From contig NIVC01003616.1 of NCBI GenBank assembly GCA_002269645.1, forward strand, positions 23,490 through 87,489: 64,000 nucleotides of DNA. The letters are read 5' to 3'. The notes beneath the pieces were generated by a model. That model was not told the origin of the DNA, searched no databases, and saw only the letters and a list, made by a program, of their open reading frames with translations. Source of the stretch: Macrostomum lignano. Lineage: Eukaryota. Of this stretch, positions 6,023 to 64,000 are shown piece by piece; the first letter of the stretch is position 1; every line of letters starts with the position of its first letter. The translations under genes and the position numbers were made by a program.

Positions 6023-20669
<14,647 letters not shown>

Positions 20670-33929: not shown

Positions 33930-49635
<15,706 letters not shown>

Positions 49636-49664
49636 GCATGATACGTACGGAAAATAGTATATTC

Positions 49665-50360
49665 TACGCAGTGGCTTTAATTGGCTTTATTTTCTATGGC
49701 CGAGTGCAGTTCTGTGGCGGTGTGGCTTTGATTGGCTTTATTGTCTATGGCAGAGTGCAGTTCTGTGGCAGTGGCTTTGATTGGCTTTATTGTCTATGGC
49801 CGAGTGCAGTTCTGTGGCAGTGGTTTTGATTGGCTTTATTGTCTATGTCCGAGTGCAGTTCTGTGGCGGTGTGGCTTTGATTGGCTTTATTGTCTATGGC
49901 CGAGTGCAGTTCTATGGCAGTGTGGCTTTGATCGACTTTATTGTCTATGGCCGAGTGCAGTTCTGTGGCAGTGGCTTTGATTGGCTTTATTGTCTATGGC
50001 CGAGTGCAGTTCTGTGGCGGTGTGGCTTTGATTGGCTTTATTGTCTATGGTCGAGAGTAGTTCTGTGGCAGTGGCTTTGATTGGCTTTATTGTCTATGGC
50101 CGAGTGCAGTTCTATGGCAGTGTGGCTTTGATTGGCTTTATTGTCTATGGCAGAGTGCAGTTCTGTGGCGGTGTGGCTTTGATTGGCTTTATTGTCTATG
50201 GCCGAGTGCAGTTCTGTGGCAGTGGCTTTGATTGGCTTTATTGTCTATGGCCGAGTGCAGTTCTGTGGCGGTGTGGCTTTGATTGACTTTATTGTCTATG
50301 GCCGAGAGTAGTTCTATGGCAGTGGCTTTGATTGGCTTTATTGTCTATGGCTGAGTGCAG
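49665..50360. repeat. 49/52-bp minisatellite just upstream of the ACAD ATG; most units carry ATTGG (CCAAT)
   Basis: About 14 units of TTGATTGGCTTTATTGTCTATGGCCGAGTGCAGTTCTGTGGCAGTGGCT. Confidence 0.93.
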
Positions 50361-51460
50361 GCTTAAGTTGACTTGACTAATTAACTTGACTGAAAAAAGT
50401 TATTCATAATTAATCAGCTATTTCTATCTACACACTAATAGTAACATAAAAAGTGCATTTTAAATTCGAAAACAGAGATGTAGCTCTTAATTACTAATAT
50501 AATTAATTATATTTGCCCCATACTTGTCGACAAAATATGGATAGAAAAATAATGAAAAATAATTTGCAACAATTAATTGTATTAAATTACGAAGAATAAT
50601 TTAAATTATTACTATAAAGCACCCAATAAGGTAACACGAAAGAAAACTGTGTATAAATATCCACCAAAAGCAGACAAAATTAGGAGTGAGCAGAAATTAG
50701 CAAAAAAATAATGTAATGCATTTGCTGTGACTTTGGGTATATCAGAGACAGAATATTAATTGCCAAATAAATTAAAAATGCATTAACAATTTAGCAAAAT
50801 GCTTCGATTAGATTAATAAACTATTGAGGAAAGCTCAATACAATATTGATACTGGGTACATTTTTCTCAAGTAGAACTCCCTTCATCGCAATTGCGCGCC
50901 CATAGCTAAATTAATAAGACTCTCAAGAGGAGCTCAAAGGGGTACTTTTAGAAATAAGAGTCCTGAAACTATTAAGAAAGTAGTTTTAATAAGTCAGAAG
51001 ACCTTCAAAACCAGGCTACCTTTATAGTGTACTTTTACAAGATCTCAATACATAGAATGGCTAAGAAAGTACTTTAAACGGACCCAAAACCCTAGATCTA
51101 TTTACATTGTATTTTTAATCGAAATTTTTAGAACCACTCTTAATGAACTTTTACCAAACCCGAAGCGCTAGGACCTTTCAGAAAGTACTTTCATCAGATC
51201 CAAATTCCTAGAAACATTTTGAATGTACTTTTACCATCTAAATCAGTGGAGTCATTTATTATGTACTTCTATCGTATTAAGATCTCTAGAAATACTCATA
51301 ATGTACTTTTACCAGATACTAGGCCCTAAAATTAGTCAGTATGTACTTTATTAAAACTAGGAACCATTGTAACGTTCCGATTTACACTCTAAACTAAAAT
51401 GCCAGTTGACTAATCATAGCAACCTACAAACCCTAATTAGCAGACGTACATGCCAGCGAG

Positions 51461-52096
51461 TCACTCGATAGACACGCCGTGCAATTTCAAATCGGCGCGC
51501 AATCGTTTACTAAGAAAGCCGGCAGGAAATTGGGCCGTATTGATTCGGCAGGCGAATACGGCCTGGCGAAGAAGCTGCGGCTGCTCCAGCACAGCCGACA
51601 GGGCGGCTTCAAGCAGAGCAGGCAGAGAGCGCAGACCCAGCCGCAGATTAGGAGAATCGAACACCAAGCCCAATAGGCGAATAGCTAATTGGTATTGGCG
51701 AGTTTTGCAAGCCGAGCGAAGCAGGCAGTCCCAGAGCTTGGGATCAGCCAGTCTGGACGATGACGATGTCGGAGTCGGCGTCGACGAAAAGTTCGCAGCG
51801 GCGTCGTCGGTTGCGTCGGCAGCCCAGCCGGGGCCGGTCAGGGCCACGCGAGCCAGCAGCAGGCGGCAGAGCAGCTCCAGGCCGCGCTCGCCTTCGCCAC
51901 GAGCGGAACGGGCCAGCATGCCGATGTCTATGGCCGAGTCCCACTGGCCAAGCGGGCAGCGGGCCGGCTGCCCCATGCCGATGCCGAAGTGGGCGCGGAC
52001 CTGCGCCGGTTGGCAACGGGGAGAGGAGGGCTGGCTGTGAGAGAGACGGACACAGACAGACAGACAGACAGACAGACAGACGACACTAAGACACTA

Positions 52097-52167
<71 letters not shown>

Positions 52168-52212
52168 TAGACAGACAGACAGATAGACAGACACTAAGAC
52201 AGACAGACAGAC

Positions 52213-52247
<35 letters not shown>

Positions 52248-52650
52248 CAGCAGGACGGACGGGACAGGCGCAAGCAGCCCTATTATTAAAAACCCCTTAC
52301 CTGCAGTTCGCAGATCCTCATATGCCAGGCGTCGGCCAGTCTGGAGTCTGCCTCCAGGCGGTGCAGCACCCTGGCGCAGGCGAGGAACACGCCGCTAGGC
52401 CGCCAATCCTCCGAGTCCCAAGCGTCCCTGACGGTGGCCAGACAGGCAGAACGAGCTCGATCGTCGCTGCGCTGCACGAGGCGAACAATCAAGTCGGCCG
52501 TGTCGGCCAAGCGCTGCTCATCGTCCAGCAGTTGGTCGAGTTCATCGCGCTGTTGCTGCTGCATCTGGGACATCATGTCGCAGACGTTGACTGATAGCAG
52601 AGCGTCGGCGCTCAGGTCCAGCATTGATTGGCTCTGCTGCGAATCGCTGC
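51461..52650 (-). CDS. Unidentified alpha-helical (PPR/TPR-like?) protein; last two exons or a complete 2-exon gene
   Basis: Exons 52650 (or ATG 52624)-52301 and 52030-51461. GTAAGG donor; the CACAGCCAG acceptor restores the frame; GC-rich host-like codon use. No family recognised. Confidence 0.65.
52055..52250. repeat. (GACA)n microsatellite in intron
   Basis: Read directly. Confidence 0.95.
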
Positions 52651-52729
52651 CTACAAGCAGAGAGATTTCAATGAAAGCTATGAGACTTTATCTAAAGATG
52701 CAATTGATCTAAAATTAATGCTAATAGGA

Positions 52730-53356
52730 TCCTAATAGGAGTGATCCTTAGGGAGCTAATAGAAGTGATCTATAGGGAGCTAATAGGAGTGATCCCTAAA
52801 GGGAGCGAGTAGGAGTGATCCTTAGGGAGCGAGTAGGAGTGATCCTTAGGGAGCGAGTAGGAGTGATCCATAGGGAGCGAGTAGGAGTGATCCTTAGGGA
52901 GCGAGTAGGAGTGATCCTTAGGGAGCGAGTAGGAGTGATCCTTAGGGAGCGAGTAGGAGTGATCCTTAGGGAGCTAATACTAATAGGAGTGATTCTTAGG
53001 TAGCTAATAGGAGTGATTCTTAGGTAGCTAATAGGAATGATCCTTAGGTAGCTAATAGTAGTGATCCTTAGGTAGCTAATAGTAGTGATCCTTAGGTAGC
53101 TAATAGTAGTGATCCTTAGGTAGCTAATAGTAGTGATCCTTAGGTAGCTAATAGTAGTGATCCTTAGGTAGCTAATAGTAATGATCCTTAGGTAGCTAAT
53201 AGTAGTGATCCTTAGGTAGCTAATAGTAATGATCCTTAGGTAGCTAATAGTAGTGATCCTTAGGTAGCTAATAGTAATGATCCTTAGGTAGCTAATAGTA
53301 GTGATCCTTAGGTAGCTAATAGTAATGATCCTTAGGTAGCTAATAGTAGTGATCCT
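52730..53356. repeat. 24-bp minisatellite with two variant blocks (TAGGAGTGATCCTTAGGGAGCGAG / TAGTAGTGATCCTTAGGTAGCTAA) abutting the Polinton end
   Basis: Tandem units read directly. Confidence 0.93.
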
Positions 53357-53624
53357 AGTAGTATAGAAAAAGACGCTTCTAGACCCAGAGCACTTTTTTA
53401 ATGACCGTTTTAAGGGTCTAGAGGGGGGACACGGGGGGTAAATAAAAAAACACATCTAAACACCATTAATACATCTAATCACCCATAATCACCCCTAACA
53501 ATAAAAATCACTTCCCAACACTTCCAAACACTCCCCAACACCCCCCTCGCGTCCCCCCTCTTAAGACCTTACAAACGGTCATTAAAATAAGGTCTGATCT
53601 AGAAGCGTCTTTTTCTATACTACT
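53357..53624. repeat. Terminal palindrome: 27-bp perfect outer inverted repeat, about 85-bp imperfect arms, about 100-nt loop
   Basis: AGTAGTATAGAAAAAGACGCTTCTAGA (53357-53383) pairs with 53598-53624. Inner 15-bp (53396-53410/53573-53587) and 10-bp (53421-53430/53551-53560) perfect blocks. Confidence 0.95.
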
Positions 53625-54100
53625 ACTCTACCCAACACTTCCAACACTTCCAACACTTCCAACACACCCCAACACTTCTAACACTTCAAATTCTCTATAA
53701 CCCCTCGCACGCGCCGCAGGCGCGAAGGGGCACAGTCTGACCCAAACTGAGTCATAGAAAAGGAACAGTGTTTAACTATCTTAAAGCAGCTCACAAAAAG
53801 AAAAACTTTGCATGATCACCCCAAAGGGTCGCAGACAGTATAATGACTAACGTGGGAATTCGGGGTTTCTATTATACTCATCAATTACCGAAGCGCAAAC
53901 CTCAGACTCAAACTGGCTACAACAGGAAGGTGAGTTGCTTACTCATGAAAAGCGCTTTTATTATTTTCAGCACTCCACCCCAAGCTTTAATTGTGTGTAT
54001 AAGAATGATGAAATCTAAAAAACTAGCCACAGCAAATAGTCTCTTATTTATGCACAACTCCTAATATCTGTCTTTTACAAGAACTAACAAACGTATTATC

Positions 54101-54988
54101 ATGGCATCATCGAAAGAAGCAAGGATATCATCTATTGTCGAGATTGCTACGAATTTATCAAGGAAGGATAAGTCATTAATTGGTTGCCGACTTAAAGACT
54201 TCTCGGAGAAGGAATTGGAGGCCTTACATGATAGTTTAGAAAAGTTGGATGGGGTGAGTGAAAAGAAGCCGACCACCCAAAAGAGGAAAGAGAAAGGTTA
54301 TGTGGAGAATGTGCTAGAGACAATCTATCAGAAGTTAGAGGAGAACGAAGATAGAGGAGTTAGTGTGTGCGTGGAAGCGATTACACAAGGCCTATCCCAC
54401 GTTGGTCTCAAGCTTGAAGGTACGACCAAACATGATTTGATTGAAAGATTTAAGAAAATAAAGTCATCTATTGAAGCTCTATCGATTGCTAAGGCAATGA
54501 TGCAATTTGAGCAGGGTAGACTTATCTACTATTTAAGCACGAAGTATCGAATGACAGAGCGAGAGCTGGCCGACTCATTCAACATAACCAGCCGGAAGGT
54601 TGAGGATTATAAAAAATACTATCAACTCTGCCTTGAATACCCAGGTTTAATTTTTTCTACCTATTCAATGGGCATAGTAATTAATTATAGTGCTGCGATT
54701 TGCAAGAAGGCAAACAACGATGCCAGGTTTAAGGAACTTCTCAAGATGCAACACGAGACAGTTGCTTTGGTTTTGAAAGATGGCAGTCCTGAAGAAAAGC
54801 AAGTTCACCAGTGGTATGAAGACAGTAAGTGATTGCTTCACTATTGTGGTAATGTAAGTAAGTTCATATTTTTTAAAGCTTGCTTTTATATTGTAGCTTT
54901 CAACGAAGATCCTGACGCGGAAGACAAAGCTGAGAGCGCCGCCGAAGTCCGAGAGATGTTCGAAGGAGGAAAATGGGTTAAGAAGTAA
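54101..54988 (+). CDS. Putative HTH DNA-binding protein of the element, probably with a 72-nt intron (271 aa spliced; 243 aa unspliced)
   Basis: HTH-like MTERELADSFNITSRKVEDY. Donor GAC A|GTAAGT (54825) and acceptor TTTTATATTGTAG (54896); phase-1 join opens a 30-codon acidic exon ending in TAA at 54988. Confidence 0.7.
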
Positions 54989-55042
54989 ATAATTTGCGTG
55001 CTATTTCCATAACTATTAAACTGACAATCTTTTTAGTGTATA

Positions 55043-55143
55043 CATGAATTTTTCTCATAGCTTAGAAAAAATCATGTGTGTGTGTGCACCAAACTCTTTT
55101 AGTGTATACATGATTTTTTCTAAGCTATGAGAAAAATTCATGT
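55043..55143. other. Two inverted 34-bp sites with 13-8-13 (loxP/FRT-like) architecture
   Basis: 55043-55076 CATGAATTTTTCT-CATAGCTT-AGAAAAAATCATG is the exact reverse complement of 55110-55143. Each is preceded by the direct repeat TCTTTTTAGTGTATA. Confidence 0.85.
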
Positions 55144-55149
55144 GCTGTT

Positions 55150-55276
55150 ATAGACACAATGCACCGAGGACAGAGAGAAAAATGGCCATTCATCGAATAA
55201 AAAGCGTCCATTGTGCTCCAGCGGAGCAGGCCATTTGTGCCATCGGGCACAGCCCGCGAACCATAGGTTCATTTTT
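55150..55276. other. GC-richer structured non-coding segment with three tandem perfect hairpins followed by T5
   Basis: TGCTCC-agc-GGAGCA (55214-55228), TGTGCC-atcg-GGCACA (55236-55251), GAACC-ata-GGTTC (55258-55270). Confidence 0.5.
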
Positions 55277-55431
55277 GGATAGAGAATCTTTTGTGTTTGC
55301 GTCTTCTTTATTTTCTATACAAAAAAGAGTAAAAAAGAGCTATAAAATAAAATCGCTCGAGATGCTTGCACACTACCCTTTTCTTTAGTGTCTGCAACTT
55401 AATTTTTCTGTTACTAAAAAAAGAACAAAAA

Positions 55432-55842
55432 ATGACACACGTTACACATATGCAAAATCTGAACGAATTGCAGGTAGGAGACCCAGTTGAATACCGAGGT
55501 GAGGGTCTTTTTGATGTGGTTGGTACAGCAGCGAATTTCGTTAAAGACAATATGGGTCTTATAGGCCAAGCAGGCTCTGCAGCAGGTTCTATAACAAACG
55601 CTGTAAAGGGCGGAATCGAAGCAGCGAGGGCAGTAGAAGAACTAAAGAAATTGAGAGAATTTAACGACACCCTCTCACAAATAAAAGCAATAAAAGATTT
55701 GAAACTAGCGCAGGAAACAACTCAAGCCGCACAACCAACAGAAACCCCCACGAAAAGCACACCAATAAGTAATAAAGATATTCAGGATTTTAATAAAATG
55801 TTAACCACAATTAAAGGCGGAAAAGGATTAAAGAAATTTTAA
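55432..55842 (+). CDS. Virion core/membrane-lytic protein candidate (adenovirus pVI-like amphipathic helix)
   Basis: 136 aa; YRGEG then LFDVVGTAANFVKDN amphipathic helix; VKGG and IKGGKG resemble adenain cleavage sites. Confidence 0.6.
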   Translation: MTHVTHMQNLNELQVGDPVEYRGEGLFDVVGTAANFVKDNMGLIGQAGSAAGSITNAVKGGIEAARAVEELKKLREFNDTLSQIKAIKDLKLAQETTQAAQPTETPTKSTPISNKDIQDFNKMLTTIKGGKGLKKF

Positions 55843-55852
55843 CAATATAAAA

Positions 55853-56812
55853 ATGGACTCAGTTAATGACGAAAAACGGCTATATTTTATAGGAGAAATT
55901 GTAGATACTTTAAATCTAGACGATAATAAACATAGTCACGCAATGTTAAAAAGATTGGATCGCTTAGGCAAAAAATTTGACTACGACATCAATACATTTA
56001 AACTTGCTGCGAAATATGCACAAGAAGGAAGACCAATATCCTTTAAGAATCATGGTAGAAATTATAGGCTGACAGACTCCGATGTAAAATTTTTATTGGA
56101 GACTCACACTAAAAAGGACGGCGGGTTGTTACCCATTTTACCAATTCTTTTAGGACTTGGGGCAGCTGGAGCAGCTGGTTTAGCAGGAAAAAGAATTCAT
56201 GATAACATAAAACAGTTAGGAGAATTAAAAGCAAAAGAAGGGGGTATATTACCCCTCGCAACTTTGCTCCCAATAATTTTTGCAGGAATTGGAGCAGCTG
56301 GAGGAGTCGCTGGAGGAGCGGCTGGAATTGCAAAAGCAGTAAATGACAAAAAAGCCGCGGATGAAAAAGCCAAAAGAGAGGCCGAATTTCAAAGACAGCA
56401 AATAACACAGGACGCACAATTCAAACAAAAACTTATAGATACCATTAATAGTAGTTCAGCAACAGCAGAGCAAAAAAGAAATGCAGAAGCTAAATTAGCA
56501 GCTGGAAAAGGTTTAATTTTAAAAGGAACAACCCAAGGAAGTGGAGTTGTCGCAGATAAACTACATGAATTTGGCCAAACTTTAGAAAAAACGGGTGAGA
56601 AAGCTAAAGGATTTTTTGACAATATTGGATCCAATTTTAGACCAGCTGTTCAGAAAATTTTTAATAAATTAGGAAAAGATTTTAACATCATTGAAAAACA
56701 CGACGGAAGCGGATTATATCTCGAAATGCGACCAAAAGCAGGTTCAGGAATTTTCTTAAATTCAAACGTTATGGGAAATGGATTGCTATTACCAAAAGCA
56801 GATCTCGAATAG
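55853..56812 (+). CDS. Adenovirus pX(mu)-like core polyprotein with repeated Gly-flanked cleavage motifs
   Basis: GGILPLATLLPIIFAGIGAAGGVAGGAAGIAKAV closely resembles the adenovirus pX C-terminus. A second GGLLPILPILLGLGAAG segment and repeated GxG-hydrophobic motifs are present. Confidence 0.7.
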   Translation: MDSVNDEKRLYFIGEIVDTLNLDDNKHSHAMLKRLDRLGKKFDYDINTFKLAAKYAQEGRPISFKNHGRNYRLTDSDVKFLLETHTKKDGGLLPILPILLGLGAAGAAGLAGKRIHDNIKQLGELKAKEGGILPLATLLPIIFAGIGAAGGVAGGAAGIAKAVNDKKAADEKAKREAEFQRQQITQDAQFKQKLIDTINSSSATAEQKRNAEAKLAAGKGLILKGTTQGSGVVADKLHEFGQTLEKTGEKAKGFFDNIGSNFRPAVQKIFNKLGKDFNIIEKHDGSGLYLEMRPKAGSGIFLNSNVMGNGLLLPKADLE

Positions 56813-56896
56813 GCTCCTGGGGGGAGGGTCTGGACACCAAAAACACAAAATTAAAAAATCAATAATTCAAACATTATATAAATTTTATTCTATAAA

Positions 56897-59800
56897 ATGG
56901 AAGCAATTTTAGCTCAAATCGACAACCCTGAACTTAGAGCACAATTAATAGCTCAAATCGATGCACAACGAATTGCCGATAGGGCTGAAATAGAAGCAAG
57001 AATTAGGGCAGAAAATGAGATACGTTTAGAAAGACAATTAAATGATATTAATAACCCCCAACCACAAGGACAAAATGGAGCTGAAGTAATATATATAGAT
57101 ATAGATATAAATACAAATTATAAAGAATATTTTAAACAAATGAAAGATAAATTAAAGACTATATTAAACAATTATACTATAAGGCCAAATAACAAACGAC
57201 AGCCAATTAAGTATAAAATAGAAGTTGAAACAGAATTTAAAAAACCAAATATTCTTAATGCAAATTCAGAAATTGAAGTAATAAATAACTTTTCACAAGA
57301 ATCATATAAAACATTATTATCAATGGGAAATTACAACAATCAATTCGATCAAATAGAAGCTGAGTTTGATGAATGGATAGATAAGATGACAGAAAACGGA
57401 TCTGGGTTTATATTTGTATCCTGTAATTCAGCAATAGTAAAGATTGCACCTATAGAAATTCTTAAAGGACGATCACATATGAAGCTCAAATTTAAATCAC
57501 CTATGATTATAAATCCAGACAATAAAGATAATAAATGTTTATTATGGTGTTTATTAATTCATAAATATCACAATCAAGTAGAATCACACATTAATAAAAT
57601 ATATAATTATAGACAATATGAGGATGAAATAATAATGAAAAACATATCATACCCAGTAGCAATAGATGATATATATAAGATTGAAAAAATGAATGGTTTA
57701 AATATTAATGTGTTTACAATTGAAGAACCAAAAGATCTAGAAGAAATTTTAACCGATCCAGAATGGTATAAGAAAAGGTGTTATCTTGTTAAGCCAGCAA
57801 CTGATATAACAGCACCAGATCAAATCGATCTTTTGTACATGCAGCGCGAAAATGAAACACATTATATATACATAAAAGATATTAGTTCTTTTTAAGAGAA
57901 AATAGAAATAGATATCCACTATGTAGAAATTGTTTTACATTTAAAAAGGATGAAACAGCTCTTAAAAACCACCAACGATTTTGTTTAGATCACAAATTTA
58001 CTAATGCTATAATGCCAGCATCTGAAGATGCAACCCTAAAGTTCCAACAACATTATATGGCAGTTAAAAAACCAATAGTAATATATGCTGATTTTGAAGC
58101 AACAAATGTTCCCTTAAAAGAATCACAGACGGTATCTGATGACGGTGATCGTGCAAAGCACGCGACCCTACGGGACGAATGCACAAAAAAATTGGCACAA
58201 CAGTTTCCGAATAGTTATTGTATATATGTACACTCTGTAGCTGATCATATATTTAAATCAAGGATGATTACTTACCACGGTAATGATGCAGCTAAGCACA
58301 TGGCAGAATCATTAGTAAATGTATTTGAATATATTCAAAATCAATATGATAAATTATCAAAAAATATTAATATGACAAATAAGGATAGAGACAATTATAA
58401 AAATGCAACAAATTGTTTTATGTGCAAAAGACATTTAAGTAAGAATAATAAGATACGAGAACATTGTCATCTAACGGAATTATCGAGGGGCAGCATGTAG
58501 ATCATGTAACGCAAAAGAAGGAAAAGGATGTAAGGAAATACCAGTATTTTTTCATAATGGTTCCGGATATGATTTTCATTTCTTAGTTCGAGAATTGCTT
58601 CATTTAGGAAAGGATGAATATGAAATAAATATATTACCTAAAACATCAGAAAATTACATATCAATAACATATGGTAAGAAATACTCCCATCTAGTTTTTC
58701 TAGATTCCTTGAGATTCTTATCAACATCTTTAGCAAATGTTGTTTCATCATTAGTTCCAAAACCATGGGATTTAGAAATAGTAAAGAAAAACTTTCCAAT
58801 CTATTGAATCGTTTCAAAAAAGAAAAACTATCCGAGGAAGAACTAATGCTATTAACTCGTAAGGGCATCTATCCATATGAATATGTAACATCTGAAGACG
58901 TATTTTCTCATACCGAATTACCCCCAATTGATAAGTTTTATTCCACATTATCACAAACAAATATAAGTGAATCGGATTATGAACACGCTCAAAAAGTATG
59001 GAAATATTTTAATTGTAAAACATTTAAAGATTATCATAATCTATATCTTAAAGCAGATGTTCTCCTATTAGCTGATGCATTTGAAAACTTTAGGAATCAT
59101 ACATATGAGAATTTTAAAATTGATCCCGCATATTGTTTCAGTGCACCGGGATTAACATGGGCTTGTGGTTTGAAATACACAGATGTTAAGATTGATTTAC
59201 TAACTGATCATGATATGTTGTTAATGATTGAGAGAGGAATTCGCGGTGGATTCTCGGGTGTACTAGGAGATAGATATACTAAAGTAAATAATAAATATCT
59301 ACCAAATTATAATAAAAAAGAAAAATCATCATATGTATTATATCTAGATGCAAACAATTTATACGGTGGTTGTATGAAACAAAAATTACCAATAGCTGAT
59401 TTCCAATGGGAAGATGACCCCGATTATTACAAAAATATTCCCGAAGGAAGGGGCTGTATTGTAGAGTGGATTTGCAATATACTCGGGAAGCAAAAGCAAA
59501 AACATATAAATATCCTTTAGCTCCAGAGCATTGTTCAGTTAATGAAGATGATTTATCACAAACACAAAAAGATTATCTTAAAGTAGATAATGCAAAACAT
59601 CTAGCAACAAAAAAATTAATATTAAATTTACATGATAAGAAAAACTATGTAGTGCATTATAAGCTTCTACAATTTTATGAAAAGCAGGGATTAAAAGTGT
59701 CTAAAGTACATCGAACAATATCGTTTATTGAGGAAGATTGGTTAGCTAAATATATTGACTTTAATTCAAATCAGAGACAGATGTCAAAAACAAATTTTGA

Positions 59801-60886
59801 GAAAGATTATTGGAAATTAATGAATAATGCTTTTTATGGAAAAACGGTTGAAAATATTAGAGATAGAACCCAATTCCATTTAGAAAAGGATATTGATAAA
59901 GCAAAGAAATATTTCTCAAAACCTAACTTTAAAGACTTTATAAAATTTGATGATAACTTTATGGGTATTCATATGAGAAATAAAACAACAAAATTTCTTA
60001 AACCAATATTTATTGGAATGGTTGTTTTAGATTTGCAAAGCTAGTAATGTATGAATACTATTATGATGTTATAAATAAAACATGGCCAGATAACTATCCA
60101 ATATATGCAGACACCGACAGTTTGGTATTTAAGGTTGAAACAGATGACCGGACGGAGTCCGCGAACCAAAGGTTCGATGTCTATAAAGATATGGAAAAAA
60201 TTAAGGATACATTGGATACCTCCGACTATCCGGATAACCATCCTTTAAAATCAGATCAAAATAAAAAAGTTGTACTTAAAATGAAAGATGAATTAAATAG
60301 CAAAATCATAACCGAGTTTATAGCAATAAGATCAAAATGCTATGCATTTAAGGTTTTAGGACAGGAGGGAGAGGTAAAAAAAATAAAAGGGGTATCAAGA
60401 GCAGCAGTAAAAAAGATAACATTTGATGATTATAAAAACGTACTTTTAGATTACCTTAATACAATTGAAAATTATCATGCTCCACAATATCGATTAAATT
60501 CAGATAAGCATCAGATGTTTGTCATCGAGACAGATAAAAAAACATTAAGTCCATTTGATGATAAAAGATATTTAGATGATAAAATTAAAACATATCCATA
60601 TGGTTTAAAAGAAGAGATAAAAAATATGATAAAAGATAAAAAACAAAAAGAAGATATAATAAGTAAATATAATGAATACAAAGCGGCAATAAATAATTAT
60701 TATTACGATTGTGATTGTGAATCCGAATGTGATTGTGAATATAATACATTTCTAGAATATGAAAAAGATATAGATAATTATTATTCAACATTTCCAAAAG
60801 AACTTAAAAAATTAAATAAGGAAAAAGTCTTGAATAACTGGAAGAGATTAACAGAAAAATTACTTATCGGGTCTGTAAAAAACTAA
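56897..60886 (+). pseudogene. Protein-primed family B DNA polymerase (pPolB), split by 5 frameshifts in this assembly
   Basis: N-terminal ENGSG / NPDNKDNKC / HYIYIKD region, C2H2 finger, IYADFE (Exo I), EndoVII-like EHCH..RG..C..CN, FHNGSGYD (Exo II), YLDANNLYG, KLMNNAFYGK, YADTDS and PFDDKRY. Confidence 0.95.
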
Positions 60887-61219
60887 AGCATGTAATTGTT
60901 TGAGCAAATCATTAACTTCAATTTCATATATTATTGAGCACCAATTATCCTCACAGTCGGCAGGGTAACTTAAACAATCCTTTATTTTTTTCCTAAGTTT
61001 TTTTATTTTTCTAACCAATCTATCTATTTCAATTTCAATTACTATTTCAGCATAAACAATATCTTGTCTTAAAAAACGTTTTCTTTTATCTATCTCATAT
61101 CGGATGGGAAACATATCGTCCCCATACTCATGATATTTCTGAGATATAATTATATTTATTTTTTTATTAATATCATTAAGTTCACGCTCTTTAGTGATAA
61201 GGATTTTTATCGTATCCAT
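60860..61219 (-). CDS. Hypothetical coiled-coil protein of the element (119 aa)
   Basis: Intact ORF with an A-rich start context, convergent with and overlapping the pPolB end. Confidence 0.55.
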   Translation of the reverse strand: MDTIKILITKERELNDINKKINIIISQKYHEYGDDMFPIRYEIDKRKRFLRQDIVYAEIVIEIEIDRLVRKIKKLRKKIKDCLSYPADCEDNWCSIIYEIEVNDLLKQLHALVFYRPDK

Positions 61220-61234
61220 TTTCTTATAAAAAAT

Positions 61235-61566
61235 TTAGTCTTCGTCGTCATCCTCCCAAACAGCCGCCAATTTTACAGTCCTATCACTCTTTTATTATTT
61301 GTTTGTTTTAGTTTAAATTGCAATCCACCCTCGTTGCAGTATTTCATAACAAACGCTTTAGGTTTATTAATAACTAAAACAGGAAAATTTTTAACATCAT
61401 CTCCGCTTAGACATAAAATTTTTTGCCCATCTAATTGTAAAAATATTGATTGAAGCCCAATAAATTTAACCTGTCTCAAACATACAATATTATATTCTTT
61501 ATTCTCCAACATATTGGGTGTGAGATAATTAATCACATTAGAATCGGTTTTGAACCAGCTCTCCAT
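61235..61566 (-). CDS. Small beta-rich protein, possibly ssDNA-binding; acidic tail after a 1-nt frameshift
   Basis: 97-aa ORF; adding 1 nt near 61275 extends it to KLAAVWEDDDED-stop (61237-61235). Confidence 0.45.
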
Positions 61567-61592
61567 TTTTAATCTAAAAAAATAATAAAAAA

Positions 61593-62053
61593 ATGAAAGA
61601 CATTTATGTTTGTAATAAATGTAATGTGACTATGCACAGAGGGCAAACAGCAAACGGAGATATATATCATATGTGTTATTCATGTTCTAAAATATATCAA
61701 TTTGAAAAAACAAAAAAGATTGAAAACTCATATTACTATTTTAAAAAACAATTTTAAGAAATCTTACAAGAGACATTTCTGATCCAATTTTAATTCCCGG
61801 AAATAATGTTTATTTATATAATAACTTTTTCCATTTAAATAAAGGAAAGGGATTAAGTTCGAAAGACTCCGAAAGGATTTTAATTTTAGTTGGATATTAT
61901 TTCAATTTTCTTATTCGAGAGAATACAAAGTTTATAAGGATAGGTAACATACCTAACGAAATGTTACTGAAAAAGTCATTGGAATTTTTATGTATTGATA
62001 AAAAATTTAAACCTAGATCAGAAGAGAGTTACCACTTTGGGAAGAATATATAA
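61593..62053 (+). CDS. Zn-ribbon protein (CxxC-x17-CxxC), below the track cut-off; about 153 aa if one A is restored at about 61745
   Basis: MKDIYVCNKC...HMCYSC to TAA at 61757; the -1 frame stays open to TAA at 62053. Confidence 0.55.
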
Positions 62054-62070
62054 CATATGCATTAGAAAAA

Positions 62071-62726
62071 CTAAACAACCTGAAGTTCTACCGCACTTCC
62101 TGACCGCGGGCTTTGTGCCCCAGTAGCAATAGTTTCAGGTTCGTAAATGCCTAATGTTTCTATCGGTGGAGCTTTGGGTTTATCGAGTCTCAACTCTTTT
62201 AATTCCATATCGGTAAAAGTTTCAACATCTAAAATTCTATTTCTATCTTTTAAATATTTTTCATATAATTCAACCGCGGTTGATAATTCATGAATCGTTA
62301 TCTCTCCGTCATCCAATATTTTTTGCACATATAAATATAATTGATTTTTATATTGCTTGGCAACATCTCTTAATGATTTATATTTTTCCTTTCTTTTTTT
62401 AAGATATAATTTAATTGCTAAAAGTATTGATAAGTTCTGATCAATTCAAAACCTGATATTGAGCCAATTGAAATACCTAAAAATAATTGAGATAAATTAA
62501 GAGTTGGAATAGATTGTAAAATACCTAAAACGATTACACATAACATTGATAAGCTTCCAAATCCAATATTGAAAAAGTCCATATTTCTTATATGGTTTGA
62601 AATTCTTCTTACTTTTTTAGTATATAAACCATAATCATAATTTATTCGATCAACATTACTTAACATCTGACCTTTACGTTGGTTGAACCGGTCGCGTTCC
62701 CATTTATCTGCTTCAGATACCGACAT
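62071..62726 (-). CDS. Two-TM protein of a type common in Polintons, split by one -1 frameshift at about 62420
   Basis: Two hydrophobic segments, then a basic stretch and LDDGEITIHELSTAVELYEKY in the -1 frame. Family recognition is from memory only. Confidence 0.55.
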
Positions 62727-63035
62727 TCTCGTCTATTTTTAATAGCACCAAAATGAATTCCCCACGCTCTTTGGGGATTTGTCCCGAGCTCAATAGGTAT
62801 TGTATTGGAGTTATTCTTTCTTTTTCTCCCATTTAAATCCTATTTTCCAAAACTCTTGAAGTATAATATGATTTTTTAATAACTTAATTAATTCTTGAAG
62901 CTTCTTATTATCCTGAACATTTACAGTACTAAATAAAAATTTGGTATGAGATTTGAATGTTTTTATATTTGATTCTTGTTTAGGAATAGGAATAATAACA
63001 TTATTTTGCCATCGATGGGTTCTACTAAAAGCCAT
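62713..63035 (-). CDS. Hypothetical protein (74 aa; about 107 aa if one A is restored)
   Basis: ORF 63035-62811; the -1 frame is open to TGA at 62715-62713. Confidence 0.4.
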
Positions 63036-63085
63036 TTTATATATAAATATTTAAGGTATCGACTTTCGCGACTTAGGCTTTAGCC

Positions 63086-64000
63086 TTAGGCGATTTCGGT
63101 TTGTGGCCGTTCCAAATATGCGGTCGCAGCAAAATCATATCCTGCTGATGTGCTACCACAAACGGCTGCACACGAATAAAATGTGCGCATCGCTCCTCCA
63201 GTTCGAGCACCAAAACCCATAAGAGTTCCCGTTTTATCTAAATCTCCCCAAGTTCCACTATCATATGTAAAAAAGTTTTGCCCAATTAGCGTATATGTAT
63301 TAGCTGATACATTGTATGTGCTTATTTGATACCAAACTCTTTGATTTAAAATATTAATTTCAAAAAGATGCAATCGCCGTTATCAATATTAGCATAGGTT
63401 ATAGTTTGATCTGCGTCATTAAGAACATCATTACGAGCTGTTGCACCGTCTGATTTTATATTGCTCCAACAACCCCAACTCTATCATGCCATTCACTCGC
63501 AAACACAATCAAGCCGGCGCGGGTTGTTAACCCGGATCCAAATTCACTTGTTGGACGTTCGTGACAATATGCACATAAAACCAAACGTCAGCCACCACTT
63601 CCTGTAGCATTAGCAACTCGGAAATAGAAGGAGGCGGAGATATTACGAAAATGGGTGAAATTAAATTGTACGCTCCAGACCGACCGATGCTTCATCAGTA
63701 ATTCTAGCACCATTTTGATAATCTATATAAGAAGCATCTCCAACAAAACTTCCTGTTGGAAAAATATCGCCGGCGTGGTTGGGTTTTGATACCAGTCCAA
63801 TTGCAAATTACGGCTCGTACAAAGCGCATCGATTGCAGGTATTCCATCCAATTTTATTTTATCATTAAAAGACATTCGCCATCCGCCGTTTGTGTTACTC
63901 GCGTGTCAACATAACCTTTAGTAACAACAGAACTGTTATCGTTTATATTAGAGACATTGGTGATCGTATTGGAACCCATATCAATTGATTGATTAACAAA
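63086..64000 (-). pseudogene. Fibre/receptor-binding-like gene with a ConA-like (L-type lectin/LamG) C-terminal domain, multiply frameshifted, 5' part outside the window
   Basis: Shaft-like IDMGSNTITNV...VVTKGYVD, then ASFYFRV..GSG(G)ADVWF, NGD(W)HLFEINI and MGFGARTGG across several frames. Confidence 0.6.

What the first reader, a model, noticed from the sequence alone, without database searches (positions are those of the whole stretch)
55028..55145. Pair of inverted loxP-like 13-8-13 sites (exact flip/flop copies)
Each 34-bp site has 13-bp arms matching at 12/13 around an asymmetric 8-bp core (CATAGCTT), the geometry of Cre/Flp-type tyrosine-recombinase targets. The second site is the exact reverse complement of the first, 33 bp away, yet both share the same 15-bp direct left flank, as if the imperfect palindrome had been duplicated and flipped. 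Flip/flop isomers are also the hallmark of hairpin-end resolution in parvo- and poxviruses. Alternatives are an HTH operator pair or a hairpin-type transcription end signal as in mimiviruses and virophages.
Basis: partly seen in the sequence, partly recalled or inferred. Interest (0 to 1): 0.8.

Follow-up and report, generated by a model that had tools for sequence, protein, structure and literature searches.

The report
Palindrome repeat array in flatworm Maverick
The two mirror-image 36-bp sites are real, but they are two units of a conserved array of palindromes next to a DNA-binding-type gene inside a virus-like Maverick element of the flatworm Macrostomum lignano. They are most likely protein-binding sites rather than recombinase targets.

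Summary
Positions 55042-55077 and 55108-55143 are exact reverse complements. Each is a 14-8-14 imperfect palindrome, and both follow the same direct left flank.

The window is the last 64 kb of Macrostomum lignano contig NIVC01003616.1. The sites lie 54 bp after the stop codon of a spliced, orphan gene with a helix-turn-helix (HTH) motif. They are about 1.7 kb inside the left end (53357) of an endogenous Maverick/Polinton (adintovirus-like) element. That element carries a protein-primed DNA polymerase (pPolB) gene and a protein-X-like gene.

Five genomic copies at four insertion loci all show the same flip-then-flop order. No tyrosine recombinase is visible, and the sites are not at the element's terminus.

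A sister element family in the same genome (HTH protein about 50% identical) has, at the same place, 3-4 direct units plus one degenerate unit. Each holds a 34-bp palindrome with the same outer 10-11-bp arms and a different, still self-complementary centre. In the left 2-3 kb of the two families, this array is the only alignable non-coding DNA.

Best reading (confidence about 0.45): a cis-acting array of binding sites for a dimeric protein, probably the adjacent HTH protein, built like baculovirus homologous regions (hrs). The flip would be an old, fixed template-switch or conversion event between two quasi-palindromes. The loxP-like and hairpin-telomere readings are not supported. An RNA-level 3'-end hairpin is not excluded.

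The parts
53357..64000 (.). Endogenous Maverick/Polinton (adintovirus-like) element. The left end is at 53357 and the element runs off the end of the contig, which is also the end of the window. The right end is not available.
   Evidence: Homology with four other genomic copies starts at 53356/53357, and the upstream flanks are unrelated at four loci. Pfam finds pPolB here and A32-type ATPase, double-jelly-roll capsid and adenain in the sister element. The window is identical to the end of NIVC01003616.1.
53356..53625 (.). Terminal foldback at the left end. The first 28 nt recur as a perfect inverted copy at 53598-53625, and the imperfect complementarity extends to about 85 nt.
   Evidence: I3: 28 nt, 100%; I2: 43 nt, 77%.
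54101..54988 (+). First gene of the element. It encodes a spliced 271-aa all-alpha protein with a helix-turn-helix motif (P0144, BOX15_Mlig000052g5). The intron is at 54825-54896.
   Evidence: 100% match to P0144. Gene model in GCA_002269645.1. GT-AG intron read. AF2 model with pLDDT 84 and local HTH matches at rmsd about 1 A. Exon 1 (the first 243 codons) is intact in all five copies.
55015..55020 (+). ATTAAA hexamer between the stop codon and unit A. It is a possible polyadenylation signal that would place transcript ends just before or at the first palindrome.
   Evidence: Read. Its function is inferred only.
55028..55078 (.). Unit A: direct left flank TCTTTTTAGTGTAT plus the 36-bp imperfect palindrome 55042-55077 (14-8-14, core CATAGCTT, A.A mismatch) plus a conserved G.
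   Evidence: (DNA hairpin -8.8 kcal/mol, z -5.8).
55079..55093 (.). Rest of the spacer between the palindromes (TG-rich). Together with unit B's left flank it is partly alignable with the sister family's spacer.
55094..55144 (.). Unit B: the same direct left flank (TCTTTTAGTGTAT) plus palindrome 55108-55143, the exact reverse complement of the palindrome in unit A (core AAGCTATG, T.T mismatch), plus a conserved G.
55196..55201 (+). AATAAA hexamer 53 nt after unit B. If used, both palindromes would lie in the 3' UTR of the HTH mRNA.
   Evidence: Read. Its function is inferred only.
55380..55412 (.). Possible degenerate third half-unit (left flank plus left arm only), about 20 nt upstream of the start codon of the next gene.
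   Evidence: D2: 55384-55396, 85%; I5: 81% complementary to the right arm of B. The covariance model did not detect it, so it is weak.
55432..55842 (+). Small 136-aa gene of unknown function. It is syntenic with a homologue in related environmental contigs.
   Evidence: tblastx to L001 331-711.
55853..56812 (+). 319-aa glycine-rich gene like adenovirus protein X (virion core or membrane-active type).
   Evidence: Sub-threshold Pfam Adeno_PX hit. Homologues carry PF05829. The adintovirus literature describes protein-X-like genes (PMC8502044).
56897..60886 (+). Protein-primed family B DNA polymerase gene, broken into six stop-free pieces in three frames. That means at least five interruptions (frame changes and/or stops).
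   Evidence: Pfam PF03175. There are 5,475 relatives, those named being from animal genomes. The copies differ mostly by 1-nt indels.
60860..64000 (-). Block of minus-strand ORFs of unknown function. The last one runs off the contig; its counterpart in copy L012 is a 554-aa ORF.
   Evidence: no Pfam hit and no similarity to the sister family's capsid gene.

Best explanation
The pair is a two-unit tandem array (66-bp period) of an imperfect 36-bp palindrome. It belongs to a Maverick/Polinton-type virus-like element of Macrostomum lignano and sits directly downstream of the element's first gene, which encodes an orphan HTH protein.

The array is a conserved cis-acting element. Most likely it is a set of binding sites for a dimeric sequence-specific DNA-binding protein, and the adjacent HTH protein is the obvious candidate. 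In this reading it acts as a regulatory, origin-like or maintenance site for the gene block that follows. Its architecture is the same as in baculovirus homologous regions: tandem units of about 64 bp, each holding an imperfect palindrome.

The second unit is flipped, but not because anything inverts it today. An old, now fixed event copied the inside of one quasi-palindrome into its neighbour in inverted register. That could have been a replication template switch or a gene conversion that used the symmetric outer arms as homology. Such an event leaves the direct flanks untouched and mirrors the core and the arm mismatch exactly.

Shown: the anatomy, the multi-copy mobile context, conservation in a sister family, and the absence of orientation polymorphism. 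Inferred: protein binding, the identity of the binder, the biological role, and how the flip arose.
For: 1. The structure is real and non-random.

2. The array is part of a mobile element. Five copies at four loci with unrelated flanks share one left boundary at 53357, and the HTH gene and the array move together with the pPolB block.

3. A sister family (L006/L010; HTH protein 49-52% identical) carries 34-bp palindromes downstream of its HTH gene, with the same outer arms ACATGATTTT/AAAATCATGT and the same T...G flanks. There are 3 or 4 units at a 60-bp period, plus one degenerate unit.

4. In the left 2-3 kb of the two families, only the HTH coding sequence (59% nt identity) and this array (69% over 106 nt, E = 1e-7) can be aligned (the standard blastn found nothing). 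This argues for sequence-specific constraint rather than a generic hairpin.

5. The centre differs between the families but stays self-complementary. Two pairs changed on both sides, and 90% of cells are paired against 30-49% when the partner is slid.

6. Half-sites occur only in the array, and a covariance model finds no further unit in any locus. There is therefore one dedicated site per element, not a per-gene signal.

7. The neighbouring protein is a confident all-alpha fold (pLDDT 84). It has an HTH that superposes at about 1 A on the HTHs of LsrR, sigma region 4 and ImmR, and it gives weak hits to ParB/SopB/DnaA-C DNA-binding domains. Sub-threshold Pfam hits to HTH_DeoR and Sigma70_r4 fall on the same residues in the sister protein.

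8. Baculovirus hrs are three to eight 64-bp units, each with a 24-bp imperfect palindrome, and act as origin and enhancer (PMC4535591).

9. The flip is fixed. All five copies have the same order, and single substitutions in two copies occur at a rate similar to the surrounding sequence.
Against: - No binding, expression or occupancy data exist. The protein-site pairing rests on adjacency and co-occurrence in only two families.
- The outer half-sites are 30 bp apart in one family and 28 bp apart in the other. That is awkward for one rigid dimer on B-DNA and fits recognition of an extruded hairpin or an RNA stem better.
- The HTH protein has no significant global match to any solved or viral predicted structure.
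- The array lies downstream of the HTH gene, where a 3'-end signal would also lie. Two hexamers of the usual polyadenylation type flank it.
- A third HTH-gene lineage (L009, 49% identical) shows no such unit in the 320 nt available after its stop codon.
- Baculovirus hrs occur at several loci per genome. Only one locus is seen here.
- The compensatory changes amount to only two events. Palindromes can also stay symmetric through template switching without any selection.
Confidence: 0.45

Rival explanations
1. RNA-level 3'-end element. In this reading the palindromes are transcribed, and as stem-loops they mark or protect the 3' end of the HTH mRNA. In the sister family they would also end the convergent capsid transcripts. 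The mirrored second unit would present the same hairpin to transcription from either side.
For: The array starts 40-54 nt after the stop codon, and two polyadenylation-type hexamers flank it. In the sister family it lies between the HTH gene (+) and minus-strand capsid-module genes, so transcription converges on it. Each unit folds as a stable hairpin. The C/A mismatch of the sister units would be a G.U pair in a minus-strand RNA. Flipping makes the plus-strand RNA of unit A identical to the minus-strand RNA of unit B.
Against: No other gene end in the element has a hairpin. None has a perfect stem of at least 9 bp (shuffles give a mean of 1.4), and none matches the model. The sequence of the arms, and not just their pairing, is conserved across families whose other non-coding DNA cannot be aligned. 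Downstream genes in the window family are on the same strand, so there is no need for bidirectionality there. Two to four tandem copies are unusual for a terminator. Neither strand turns the A.A or T.T mismatch into a wobble pair.
Confidence: 0.2
2. No present function. An AT-rich quasi-palindrome was tandemly duplicated and one copy was flipped by template switching. It hitch-hikes in a young, recently amplified element family.
For: The copies differ by well under 1% in the HTH exon and about 1% around the array, so identity among them says nothing about selection. Unit number varies (3 versus 4) as in any minisatellite, and the host genome is extremely rich in tandem repeats. Single substitutions in the palindromes of L012 and L013 are tolerated.
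Against: Conservation of the arms, flanks and position across two families with about 50% protein divergence, where no other non-coding sequence is alignable, is hard to obtain without constraint. The chance recurrence of a 10-11-nt arm pair at the same place is negligible.
Confidence: 0.15
3. Long-hairpin RNA gene. Units A and B pair with each other into a perfect duplex of about 40 bp that is processed into small RNAs, by host silencing of the element or by the element itself.
For: As RNA, 55000-55180 folds into one long perfect hairpin at -63.3 kcal/mol, z = -8.0, with 0 of 200 shuffles as stable. Many miRNA-precursor models give sub-threshold hits to exactly 55040-55146 on both strands. 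The flip is what makes the A:B pairing perfect.
Against: All Rfam hits are far below the gathering scores (best 51.9 against 101) and occur on both strands, as for any long hairpin. The sister family uses direct units of near-perfect palindromes, so the inverted arrangement is not the conserved feature. Copy L012 has already lost perfect A:B complementarity. No expression data are available.
Confidence: 0.07
4. Target sites of a Cre/Flp-type tyrosine recombinase that inverts the 30-bp spacer or the cores.
For: The 13-8-13 geometry with an asymmetric core, and two sites in inverted orientation.
Against: The orientation is the same in five copies at four loci. No Phage_integrase or other recombinase domain occurs in any ORF segment of at least 80 aa in the visible element or in the sister element. 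Sister-family units are direct repeats with symmetric centres. A 30-bp spacer is, from general knowledge of these enzymes, too short for synapsis of inverted sites. Inversion between A and B would invert the spacer, yet the direct left flank lies inside that spacer and is in the same orientation as at unit A.
Confidence: 0.03
5. Relic of hairpin-telomere resolution, meaning flip/flop isomers as in parvo- or poxviruses or a protelomerase site.
For: An imperfect palindrome is present in both orientations. The element also has a terminal foldback at its left end. Terminal palindromes have been reported in endogenous virophages and PLVs (bioRxiv 10.64898/2026.07.28.741278).
Against: The sites are 1.7 kb inside the left end and separated from it by a complete gene. 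Both isomers sit side by side in every copy instead of alternating between copies. The element encodes a protein-primed polymerase. No protelomerase is visible.
Confidence: 0.02

Closest known systems
Baculovirus homologous regions (hrs), bound by the IE1 dimer
   Same: Tandem units of about 60-70 bp, each centred on an imperfect palindrome, in a few copies per array. They occur in an AT-rich invertebrate DNA-virus genome, and copy number varies between genomes (PMC4535591; compare).
   Different: There is no sequence relationship. Hrs occur at several loci per genome, whereas one locus is seen here. Hr palindromes are 24-30 bp against 34-36 bp here. The binder here would be an unrelated orphan HTH protein. 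Enhancer or origin activity is untested.
Repeated palindromic sites paired with their own binding-protein gene (ParB/parS, SopB/sopC and EBNA1/oriP-type modules)
   Same: A gene for an HTH-type DNA-binding protein sits next to a short array of palindromic sites, and the two are inherited together as a module. Weak structural hits to ParB/SopB DNA-binding domains were found.
   Different: The structural hits are not significant (E of at least 0.76). No partition ATPase is visible. An episomal stage of the element is unknown. The half-site spacing is far larger than in parS-type sites.
loxP/FRT-type tyrosine-recombinase sites
   Same: 13-bp inverted arms around an 8-bp asymmetric core, with two sites in inverted orientation.
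   Different: No recombinase was found, there is no orientation polymorphism, the spacer is 30 bp, the sister family has symmetric centres and direct units, and the arm sequence is unrelated as far as can be judged without a comparator.
Hairpin 3'-end signals of mimiviruses (the 'hairpin rule')
   Same: An AT-rich palindrome just after a stop codon in a virus-like element.
   Different: In those viruses nearly every gene has its own, non-conserved hairpin. Here one locus per element has a sequence-conserved, repeated palindrome.
Quasi-palindrome template switching and minute hairpin-loop inversions (known from bacterial mutagenesis and chloroplast non-coding DNA)
   Same: This explains an exact reverse-complement replacement bounded by the symmetric outer stem, with the flanks unchanged.
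   Different: Here the donor may have been the neighbouring unit rather than the same hairpin. The event itself cannot be observed, only its product.
Maverick/Polinton elements and adintoviruses of animals
   Same: pPolB, a protein-X-like gene, an A32-type ATPase, a double-jelly-roll capsid and adenain (the last three seen in the sister family), a 5'-AG terminus, and multi-copy insertion (PMC8502044).
   Different: The adintovirus description I searched does not mention a left-end spliced HTH gene followed by a palindrome array (no occurrence of palindrome or hairpin). The integrase and the right end have not been seen.

Membership tests
Cre/Flp-type recombination sites | Two inverted arms of about 13 bp around a 6-8 bp asymmetric core | tested here: met
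   14-8-14 (13/14), core CATAGCTT.
Cre/Flp-type recombination sites | A cognate tyrosine recombinase encoded by the same element | tested here: not met
   no recombinase domain among 33 selected ORF segments of at least 80 aa from the window element, the L012 tail and the sister element. The caveat is that the right part of the element lies beyond the contig.
Cre/Flp-type recombination sites | Both orientations of the segment between inverted sites occur among copies or reads | tested here: not met
   five copies at four loci all have the same arrangement. Raw reads could not be tested.
Hairpin-telomere flip/flop (parvo-, poxvirus, protelomerase phages) | The palindrome lies at the genome terminus | tested here: not met
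   The left end is at 53357 and the sites at 55042-55143, with a complete gene in between.
Hairpin-telomere flip/flop (parvo-, poxvirus, protelomerase phages) | Flip and flop alternate at the same position between genome copies | tested here: not met
   every copy has flip at unit A and flop at unit B.
Mimivirus-type hairpin rule | Hairpins follow most genes, and their sequence is gene-specific | tested here: not met
   Only this locus has hairpins, and its sequence is conserved between families.
Baculovirus hr-like palindrome arrays (analogy, not homology) | Tandem 60-70-bp units, each with an imperfect palindrome | tested here: met
   66-bp period x2; 60-bp period x3-4; compare PMC4535591.
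Baculovirus hr-like palindrome arrays (analogy, not homology) | Several dispersed arrays per genome | tested here: not met
   There is one array in the visible 10.6 kb and one in 10.7 kb of the sister element. The right part has not been seen.
Baculovirus hr-like palindrome arrays (analogy, not homology) | Bound by a virus-encoded dimeric activator, with enhancer or origin activity | not testable with these tools
   The only evidence is the adjacency of an HTH-motif protein.
Maverick/Polinton (adintovirus-like) element | Protein-primed family B DNA polymerase | tested here: met
   PF03175. The nearest relatives are in animal genomes. The gene is broken.
Maverick/Polinton (adintovirus-like) element | Capsid module: double-jelly-roll capsid protein, A32/FtsK-type ATPase and adenain-type protease | tested here: inconclusive
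   All three were found in the sister element L006. None was recognised in the visible part of the window element.
Maverick/Polinton (adintovirus-like) element | rve-type integrase, terminal inverted repeats and target-site duplication | not testable with these tools
   The contig ends inside the element and contig look-ups were exhausted. Only the left end (5'-AG...) is seen. Relatives L003 and L004 carry rve.
miRNA / hairpin-RNA precursor | Match to a curated family at its gathering score, or evidence of processed small RNAs | tested here: not met
   The best Rfam hit is 51.9 bits against a gathering score of 101, on both strands. Nothing reaches gathering. Expression cannot be tested.

The most novel reading that the evidence does not exclude
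The orphan HTH gene and its downstream palindrome array form a self-contained protein-plus-site module at the left end of an animal Maverick/adintovirus-like element. It would be comparable to EBNA1/oriP, ParB/parS or IE1/hr, serving as an origin-like, maintenance or master-regulatory site. Such a module would be a cis/trans component not yet described for this virus group. The conserved stem with a variable centre and the fixed flip would then reflect recognition of an extruded hairpin or cruciform rather than of plain duplex DNA.
Probability: 0.15. Interest if true: 0.7.

Novelty: new variant of a known kind. Interest (0 to 1): 0.4.

Why it matters
Mavericks/Polintons and adintoviruses are known almost only from their protein genes. 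Their cis-acting DNA, apart from terminal repeats, is essentially undescribed.

Here the one non-coding element conserved between two diverged flatworm families is a palindrome array tied to a lineage-specific HTH gene. That gives a concrete, testable candidate for a regulatory, origin-like or packaging-type site and its binding protein in an animal virus-like element.

It is also a clean natural example of an exact flip of a quasi-palindrome inside a direct repeat. This shows that a 'flip/flop' appearance does not require a recombinase or a hairpin telomere. If the array turns out to be only a 3'-end hairpin or neutral, the finding is ordinary.

Tried and rejected
- **Source contig.** Exact look-up of the window's 319-aa protein found nothing. 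The source was identified through the HTH protein instead.
- **IMG/VR.** There are no relatives of the protein-X-like gene or of distant HTH-family members. A scan for the arm pattern gave one lone palindrome in a giant-virus MAG with unrelated genes, judged to be chance.
- **JGI metagenome contigs.** Two scans with distant HTH-family proteins found nothing. Alignments of the family were too divergent to use as queries.
- **Related contigs.** Related environmental contigs (L001, L002) and related animal elements (L003, L004) share the small gene and protein-X gene, or pPolB, but have no such palindromes.
- **Rfam.** Nothing reaches gathering score. The sub-threshold miRNA hits are generic hairpin matches.
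- **HTH protein.** There is no Pfam family above threshold. There is no PDB sequence hit. Neither the PDB nor the BFVD fold search gave a significant match, even with the pLDDT-84 model.
- **tRNA idea.** A tRNA-like stretch before the sister array was checked, and ARAGORN finds none.
- **Capsid-gene idea.** The window's last minus-strand gene is not shown to be the capsid gene. It has no Pfam hit and no similarity to the sister family's capsid protein.
- **dN/dS.** A dN/dS test on the HTH gene among copies had too few substitutions, 0-4 per pair.
- **Long TIR idea.** The idea that the HTH gene and array lie in a long terminal inverted repeat is not supported. Only one annotated HTH gene per contig was returned. 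The right end could not be fetched.
Full report
**1. The observation**

Positions 55042-55077 and 55108-55143 are exact reverse complements over 36 nt, separated by 30 nt. Each is itself a 14-8-14 imperfect palindrome with 13 of 14 positions paired. Both the 8-nt core (CATAGCTT, AAGCTATG) and the single arm mismatch (A.A, T.T) are mirrored between them.

Read as direct repeats, the two units are 48 nt long and 83% identical with a 66-nt period. They share the left flank TC(T)TTTTAGTGTAT and a G after the palindrome.

The 36-mer occurs only at these two places in 64 kb, even allowing 3 mismatches, against 0.00 expected. Only one other hairpin with a stem of at least 12 bp exists in the window, and it lies in a minisatellite.

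**2. Where it is**

The upstream ORF 54101-54832 is 100% identical to Macrostomum lignano protein P0144 (BOX15_Mlig000052g5). The locus fetched for that protein is base-for-base identical to window 44101-64000 and ends where the window ends. The window is therefore the last 64 kb of contig NIVC01003616.1 of assembly GCA_002269645.1.

The host DNA is extremely rich in mini- and microsatellites. From about 53.4 kb onwards the composition and gene packing change.

The gene order from the left end is as follows.

- A spliced gene for a 271-aa protein lies at 54101-54988, with an intron at 54825-54896.
- The two palindromes follow.
- A 136-aa gene lies at 55432-55842.
- A 319-aa glycine-rich gene lies at 55853-56812. 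It gives a sub-threshold Adeno_PX match, and its relatives carry PF05829.
- A protein-primed family B polymerase gene lies at 56897-60886 (PF03175). It has thousands of relatives, and those that carry a source name come from animal genomes: clam, wasp, spider and hydrozoan.
- Minus-strand ORFs of unknown function continue to the contig end.

Related elements from another assembly carry an rve integrase, a double-jelly-roll capsid protein, a PLA2 domain and Adeno_PX. This is the gene set of Mavericks/Polintons, also called adintoviruses (PMC8502044).

**3. It is a mobile, multi-copy element and the HTH gene belongs to it**

Four further genomic copies were fetched: L007, L008, L012 and L013. 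They are 93-99% identical to the window from position 53356/53357 up to about window position 63050; beyond that, L008 stays about 97% identical nearly to the window end, L012 and L013 drop to about 80% (63110-63864), and L007's contig ends.

The 3 kb upstream of that boundary are unrelated between the window, L007/L008 (one locus), L012 and L013. That gives four independent insertion loci with one common left end, which begins AGTAG.

The HTH gene and the palindromes are therefore inside the element. The palindromes are about 1.7 kb from its end. The right end is not available, because this contig and that of L007 stop inside the element. L008's contig continues, but only about 10 kb beyond the gene was fetched.

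The polymerase gene is broken. In the window it is six stop-free pieces in three frames, so there are at least five interruptions. The other copies have 7, 9, 9 and 4 pieces. The copies differ there mainly by 1-nt indels. As I recall, this assembly is long-read based, so real decay and assembly error cannot be separated. The first exon of the HTH gene is intact in all five copies, with 0-4 substitutions per pair.

**4.

All five copies have the same arrangement, with the first unit in one orientation and the second in the other. L012 has one substitution in the loop of unit A. L013 has one in the left arm of unit B. These rates are typical of the surrounding sequence.

No tyrosine-recombinase, protelomerase or other recombinase domain was found among 33 selected ORF segments of at least 80 aa from the window element, the tail of L012 and the sister element. 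The Pfam hits were pPolB, Pox_A32 ATPase, double-jelly-roll capsid and adenovirus-type protease, plus two marginal hits (DUF7329, Ndc1_Nup).

The sites are not terminal. The recombinase and hairpin-telomere readings therefore fail their own tests, within the limits of five assembled copies and an unseen right end.

**5. Conservation in a sister family**

M. lignano has a second family whose HTH protein is 49-52% identical (P0146; loci L006 and L010). Its left end also begins AGTAG, about 1 kb upstream of the gene.

Downstream of that gene lie 34-bp palindromes of the form ACATGATTTT[C/T]ACGAAC[G/T]TTCGTAAAAATCATGT. L006 has three and L010 has four, at a 60-nt period. One degenerate unit lies 294 nt upstream of the array.

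The comparison of the units with those of the window gives four points.

- The outer 10-11 bp of each arm, the preceding T and the following G are the same as in the window.
- The centre is different but again self-complementary.
- On the joint alignment, 90% of cells pair, against 30-49% when the partner is slid. Two pairs changed on both sides between the families.
- These sister units are direct repeats with nearly symmetric centres, so the conserved feature is the palindrome array and not the inverted arrangement.

A sensitive nucleotide comparison of the left 2-3 kb of the two families aligns only the HTH coding region (59%) and the array (69% over 106 nt, E = 1e-7). Standard blastn aligns nothing.

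Downstream of the array the families differ. In the window family the small gene, the protein-X-like gene and pPolB follow on the plus strand. In L006, capsid-module genes follow on the minus strand. Apart from the HTH gene, tblastx finds only a weak pPolB match between the two elements.

Half-sites occur nowhere else in either element. A covariance model built from ten units finds no further unit in the window or in ten other loci.

**6. What it most likely is**

The evidence combines as follows.

- The arm sequence itself is conserved.
- Two to four regularly spaced units are present.
- There is one locus per element.
- The array is tightly linked to a lineage-specific gene.

The gene's product is a confident all-alpha fold (pLDDT 84 with a 17-sequence alignment). 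It contains a canonical HTH, with local superpositions of about 1 A on the HTHs of LsrR, sigma region 4 and ImmR. It also gives weak, non-significant hits to ParB, SopB and DnaA-C domains.

Together this points to a protein-binding cis-element with the neighbouring protein as candidate binder. The nearest architectural analogue is the baculovirus homologous region, made of three to eight 64-bp units, each with a 24-bp imperfect palindrome, acting as origin and enhancer (PMC4535591). This is an analogy in construction, not a family membership. There is no sequence relationship, only one array is visible, and binding is untested.

One detail argues that the folded stem, as DNA cruciform or RNA, may be what is recognised rather than plain duplex. 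The outer half-sites are 30 bp apart in one family and 28 bp apart in the other, and the centre is free to change as long as it pairs.

**7. How the flip arose (inference)**

The outer arms read the same in both orientations, so two neighbouring units can align in inverted register. A replication template switch or a conversion tract between them, or within one hairpin, would replace everything inside the outer arms by its reverse complement and leave the flanks direct.

That is exactly what is seen: core and mismatch are mirrored, and the left flank and trailing G are direct. The event predates the amplification of the family, because all copies share it. No recombinase is needed.

**8. Rivals**

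- **RNA 3'-end element.** This remains possible. The array starts 40-54 nt after the stop codon. An ATTAAA lies at 55015-55020 and an AATAAA at 55196-55201. In the sister family the array sits between convergent genes. Against it, no other gene end in the element has a hairpin, and sequence conservation is not expected of a generic terminator.
- **Long hairpin RNA.** As RNA, A and B pair into one perfect hairpin of about 40 bp (-63 kcal/mol, z = -8), which draws generic sub-threshold miRNA-model hits. The inverted arrangement is not conserved in the sister family, and L012 has lost perfect complementarity.
- **Neutrality.** This fits the young age of the copies but not the conservation between families.

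**9. The HTH protein family**

Word-based search finds it only in Macrostomum, as four clusters. A profile search of 1.84 billion representatives finds 18 proteins, including another M. lignano paralogue group and short transcript-size contigs from unnamed samples. Their context could not be fetched.

A third lineage (L009, 49% identical) has no unit in the 320 nt after its stop codon, where the contig ends.

**10. Verdict**

The headline interpretation is not supported.

The finding is a previously undescribed conserved cis-element of a flatworm Maverick lineage. It is interesting to specialists, but its function is unproven.

Noticed in passing
window 53356-53625: The left end of the element is a foldback. 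The terminal 28 nt recur as a perfect inverted copy 214 nt further in, with imperfect complementarity over about 85 nt and an A/C-rich repeat between the arms. The sister family has three 82-nt tandem repeats at its end instead. Terminal palindromes were recently noted in endogenous virophages and PLVs (bioRxiv 10.64898/2026.07.28.741278).
   Followed up: partly
L006 11463-11535: A sub-threshold hammerhead ribozyme (HH9) match (32.7 bits, gathering 52, E = 4e-6) lies in the roughly 240-nt stretch that separates a degenerate palindrome unit from the main array of the sister element. It may be a small ribozyme-bearing insertion.
   Followed up: no
window 56897-60886 and copies L007, L008, L012, L013: The polymerase reading frame is in 6, 7, 9, 9 and 4 stop-free pieces in the five copies, and the copies differ mostly by 1-nt indels. 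The first exon (243 codons) of the 271-codon HTH gene is intact in all five. Either the HTH gene is preferentially preserved, or many breaks are long-read assembly errors.
   Followed up: partly
window 9630-17063: A 7.4-kb (TATC)n microsatellite of about 1,865 units gives a GC skew of -1.0 over 6 kb.
   Followed up: no
window 37525-41343 (with 35675-36917 and 41579-43828): An uninterrupted 1,272-aa non-LTR retrotransposon ORF (endonuclease, reverse transcriptase, RNase H) sits inside a 24-nt minisatellite. This makes the flanks look like long direct repeats.
   Followed up: partly
window 44388-49406: A 23-nt minisatellite of about 219 units (5 kb) lies within the span of the annotated acyl-CoA dehydrogenase gene, presumably in an intron.
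   Followed up: no
L011 9810-9843 (IMG/VR GVMAG-S-1101169-75): A lone 34-nt palindrome has the same outer arms and a similar loop start (CATAGC). It lies between unrelated genes of a giant-virus MAG. It was the only hit in IMG/VR and was judged coincidental.
   Followed up: partly
window 53864-53880 and L006 9512-9528: A 17-nt block (16/17 identical) lies upstream of the HTH gene in both families. It is the only other hint of non-coding conservation (E = 0.38) and could be a promoter or transcript-start element.
   Followed up: no
window 55380-55412: A degenerate copy of the unit's left flank and left arm lies about 20 nt upstream of the start codon of the small gene. The sister family also has a degenerate unit about 290 nt from its array.
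   Followed up: partly
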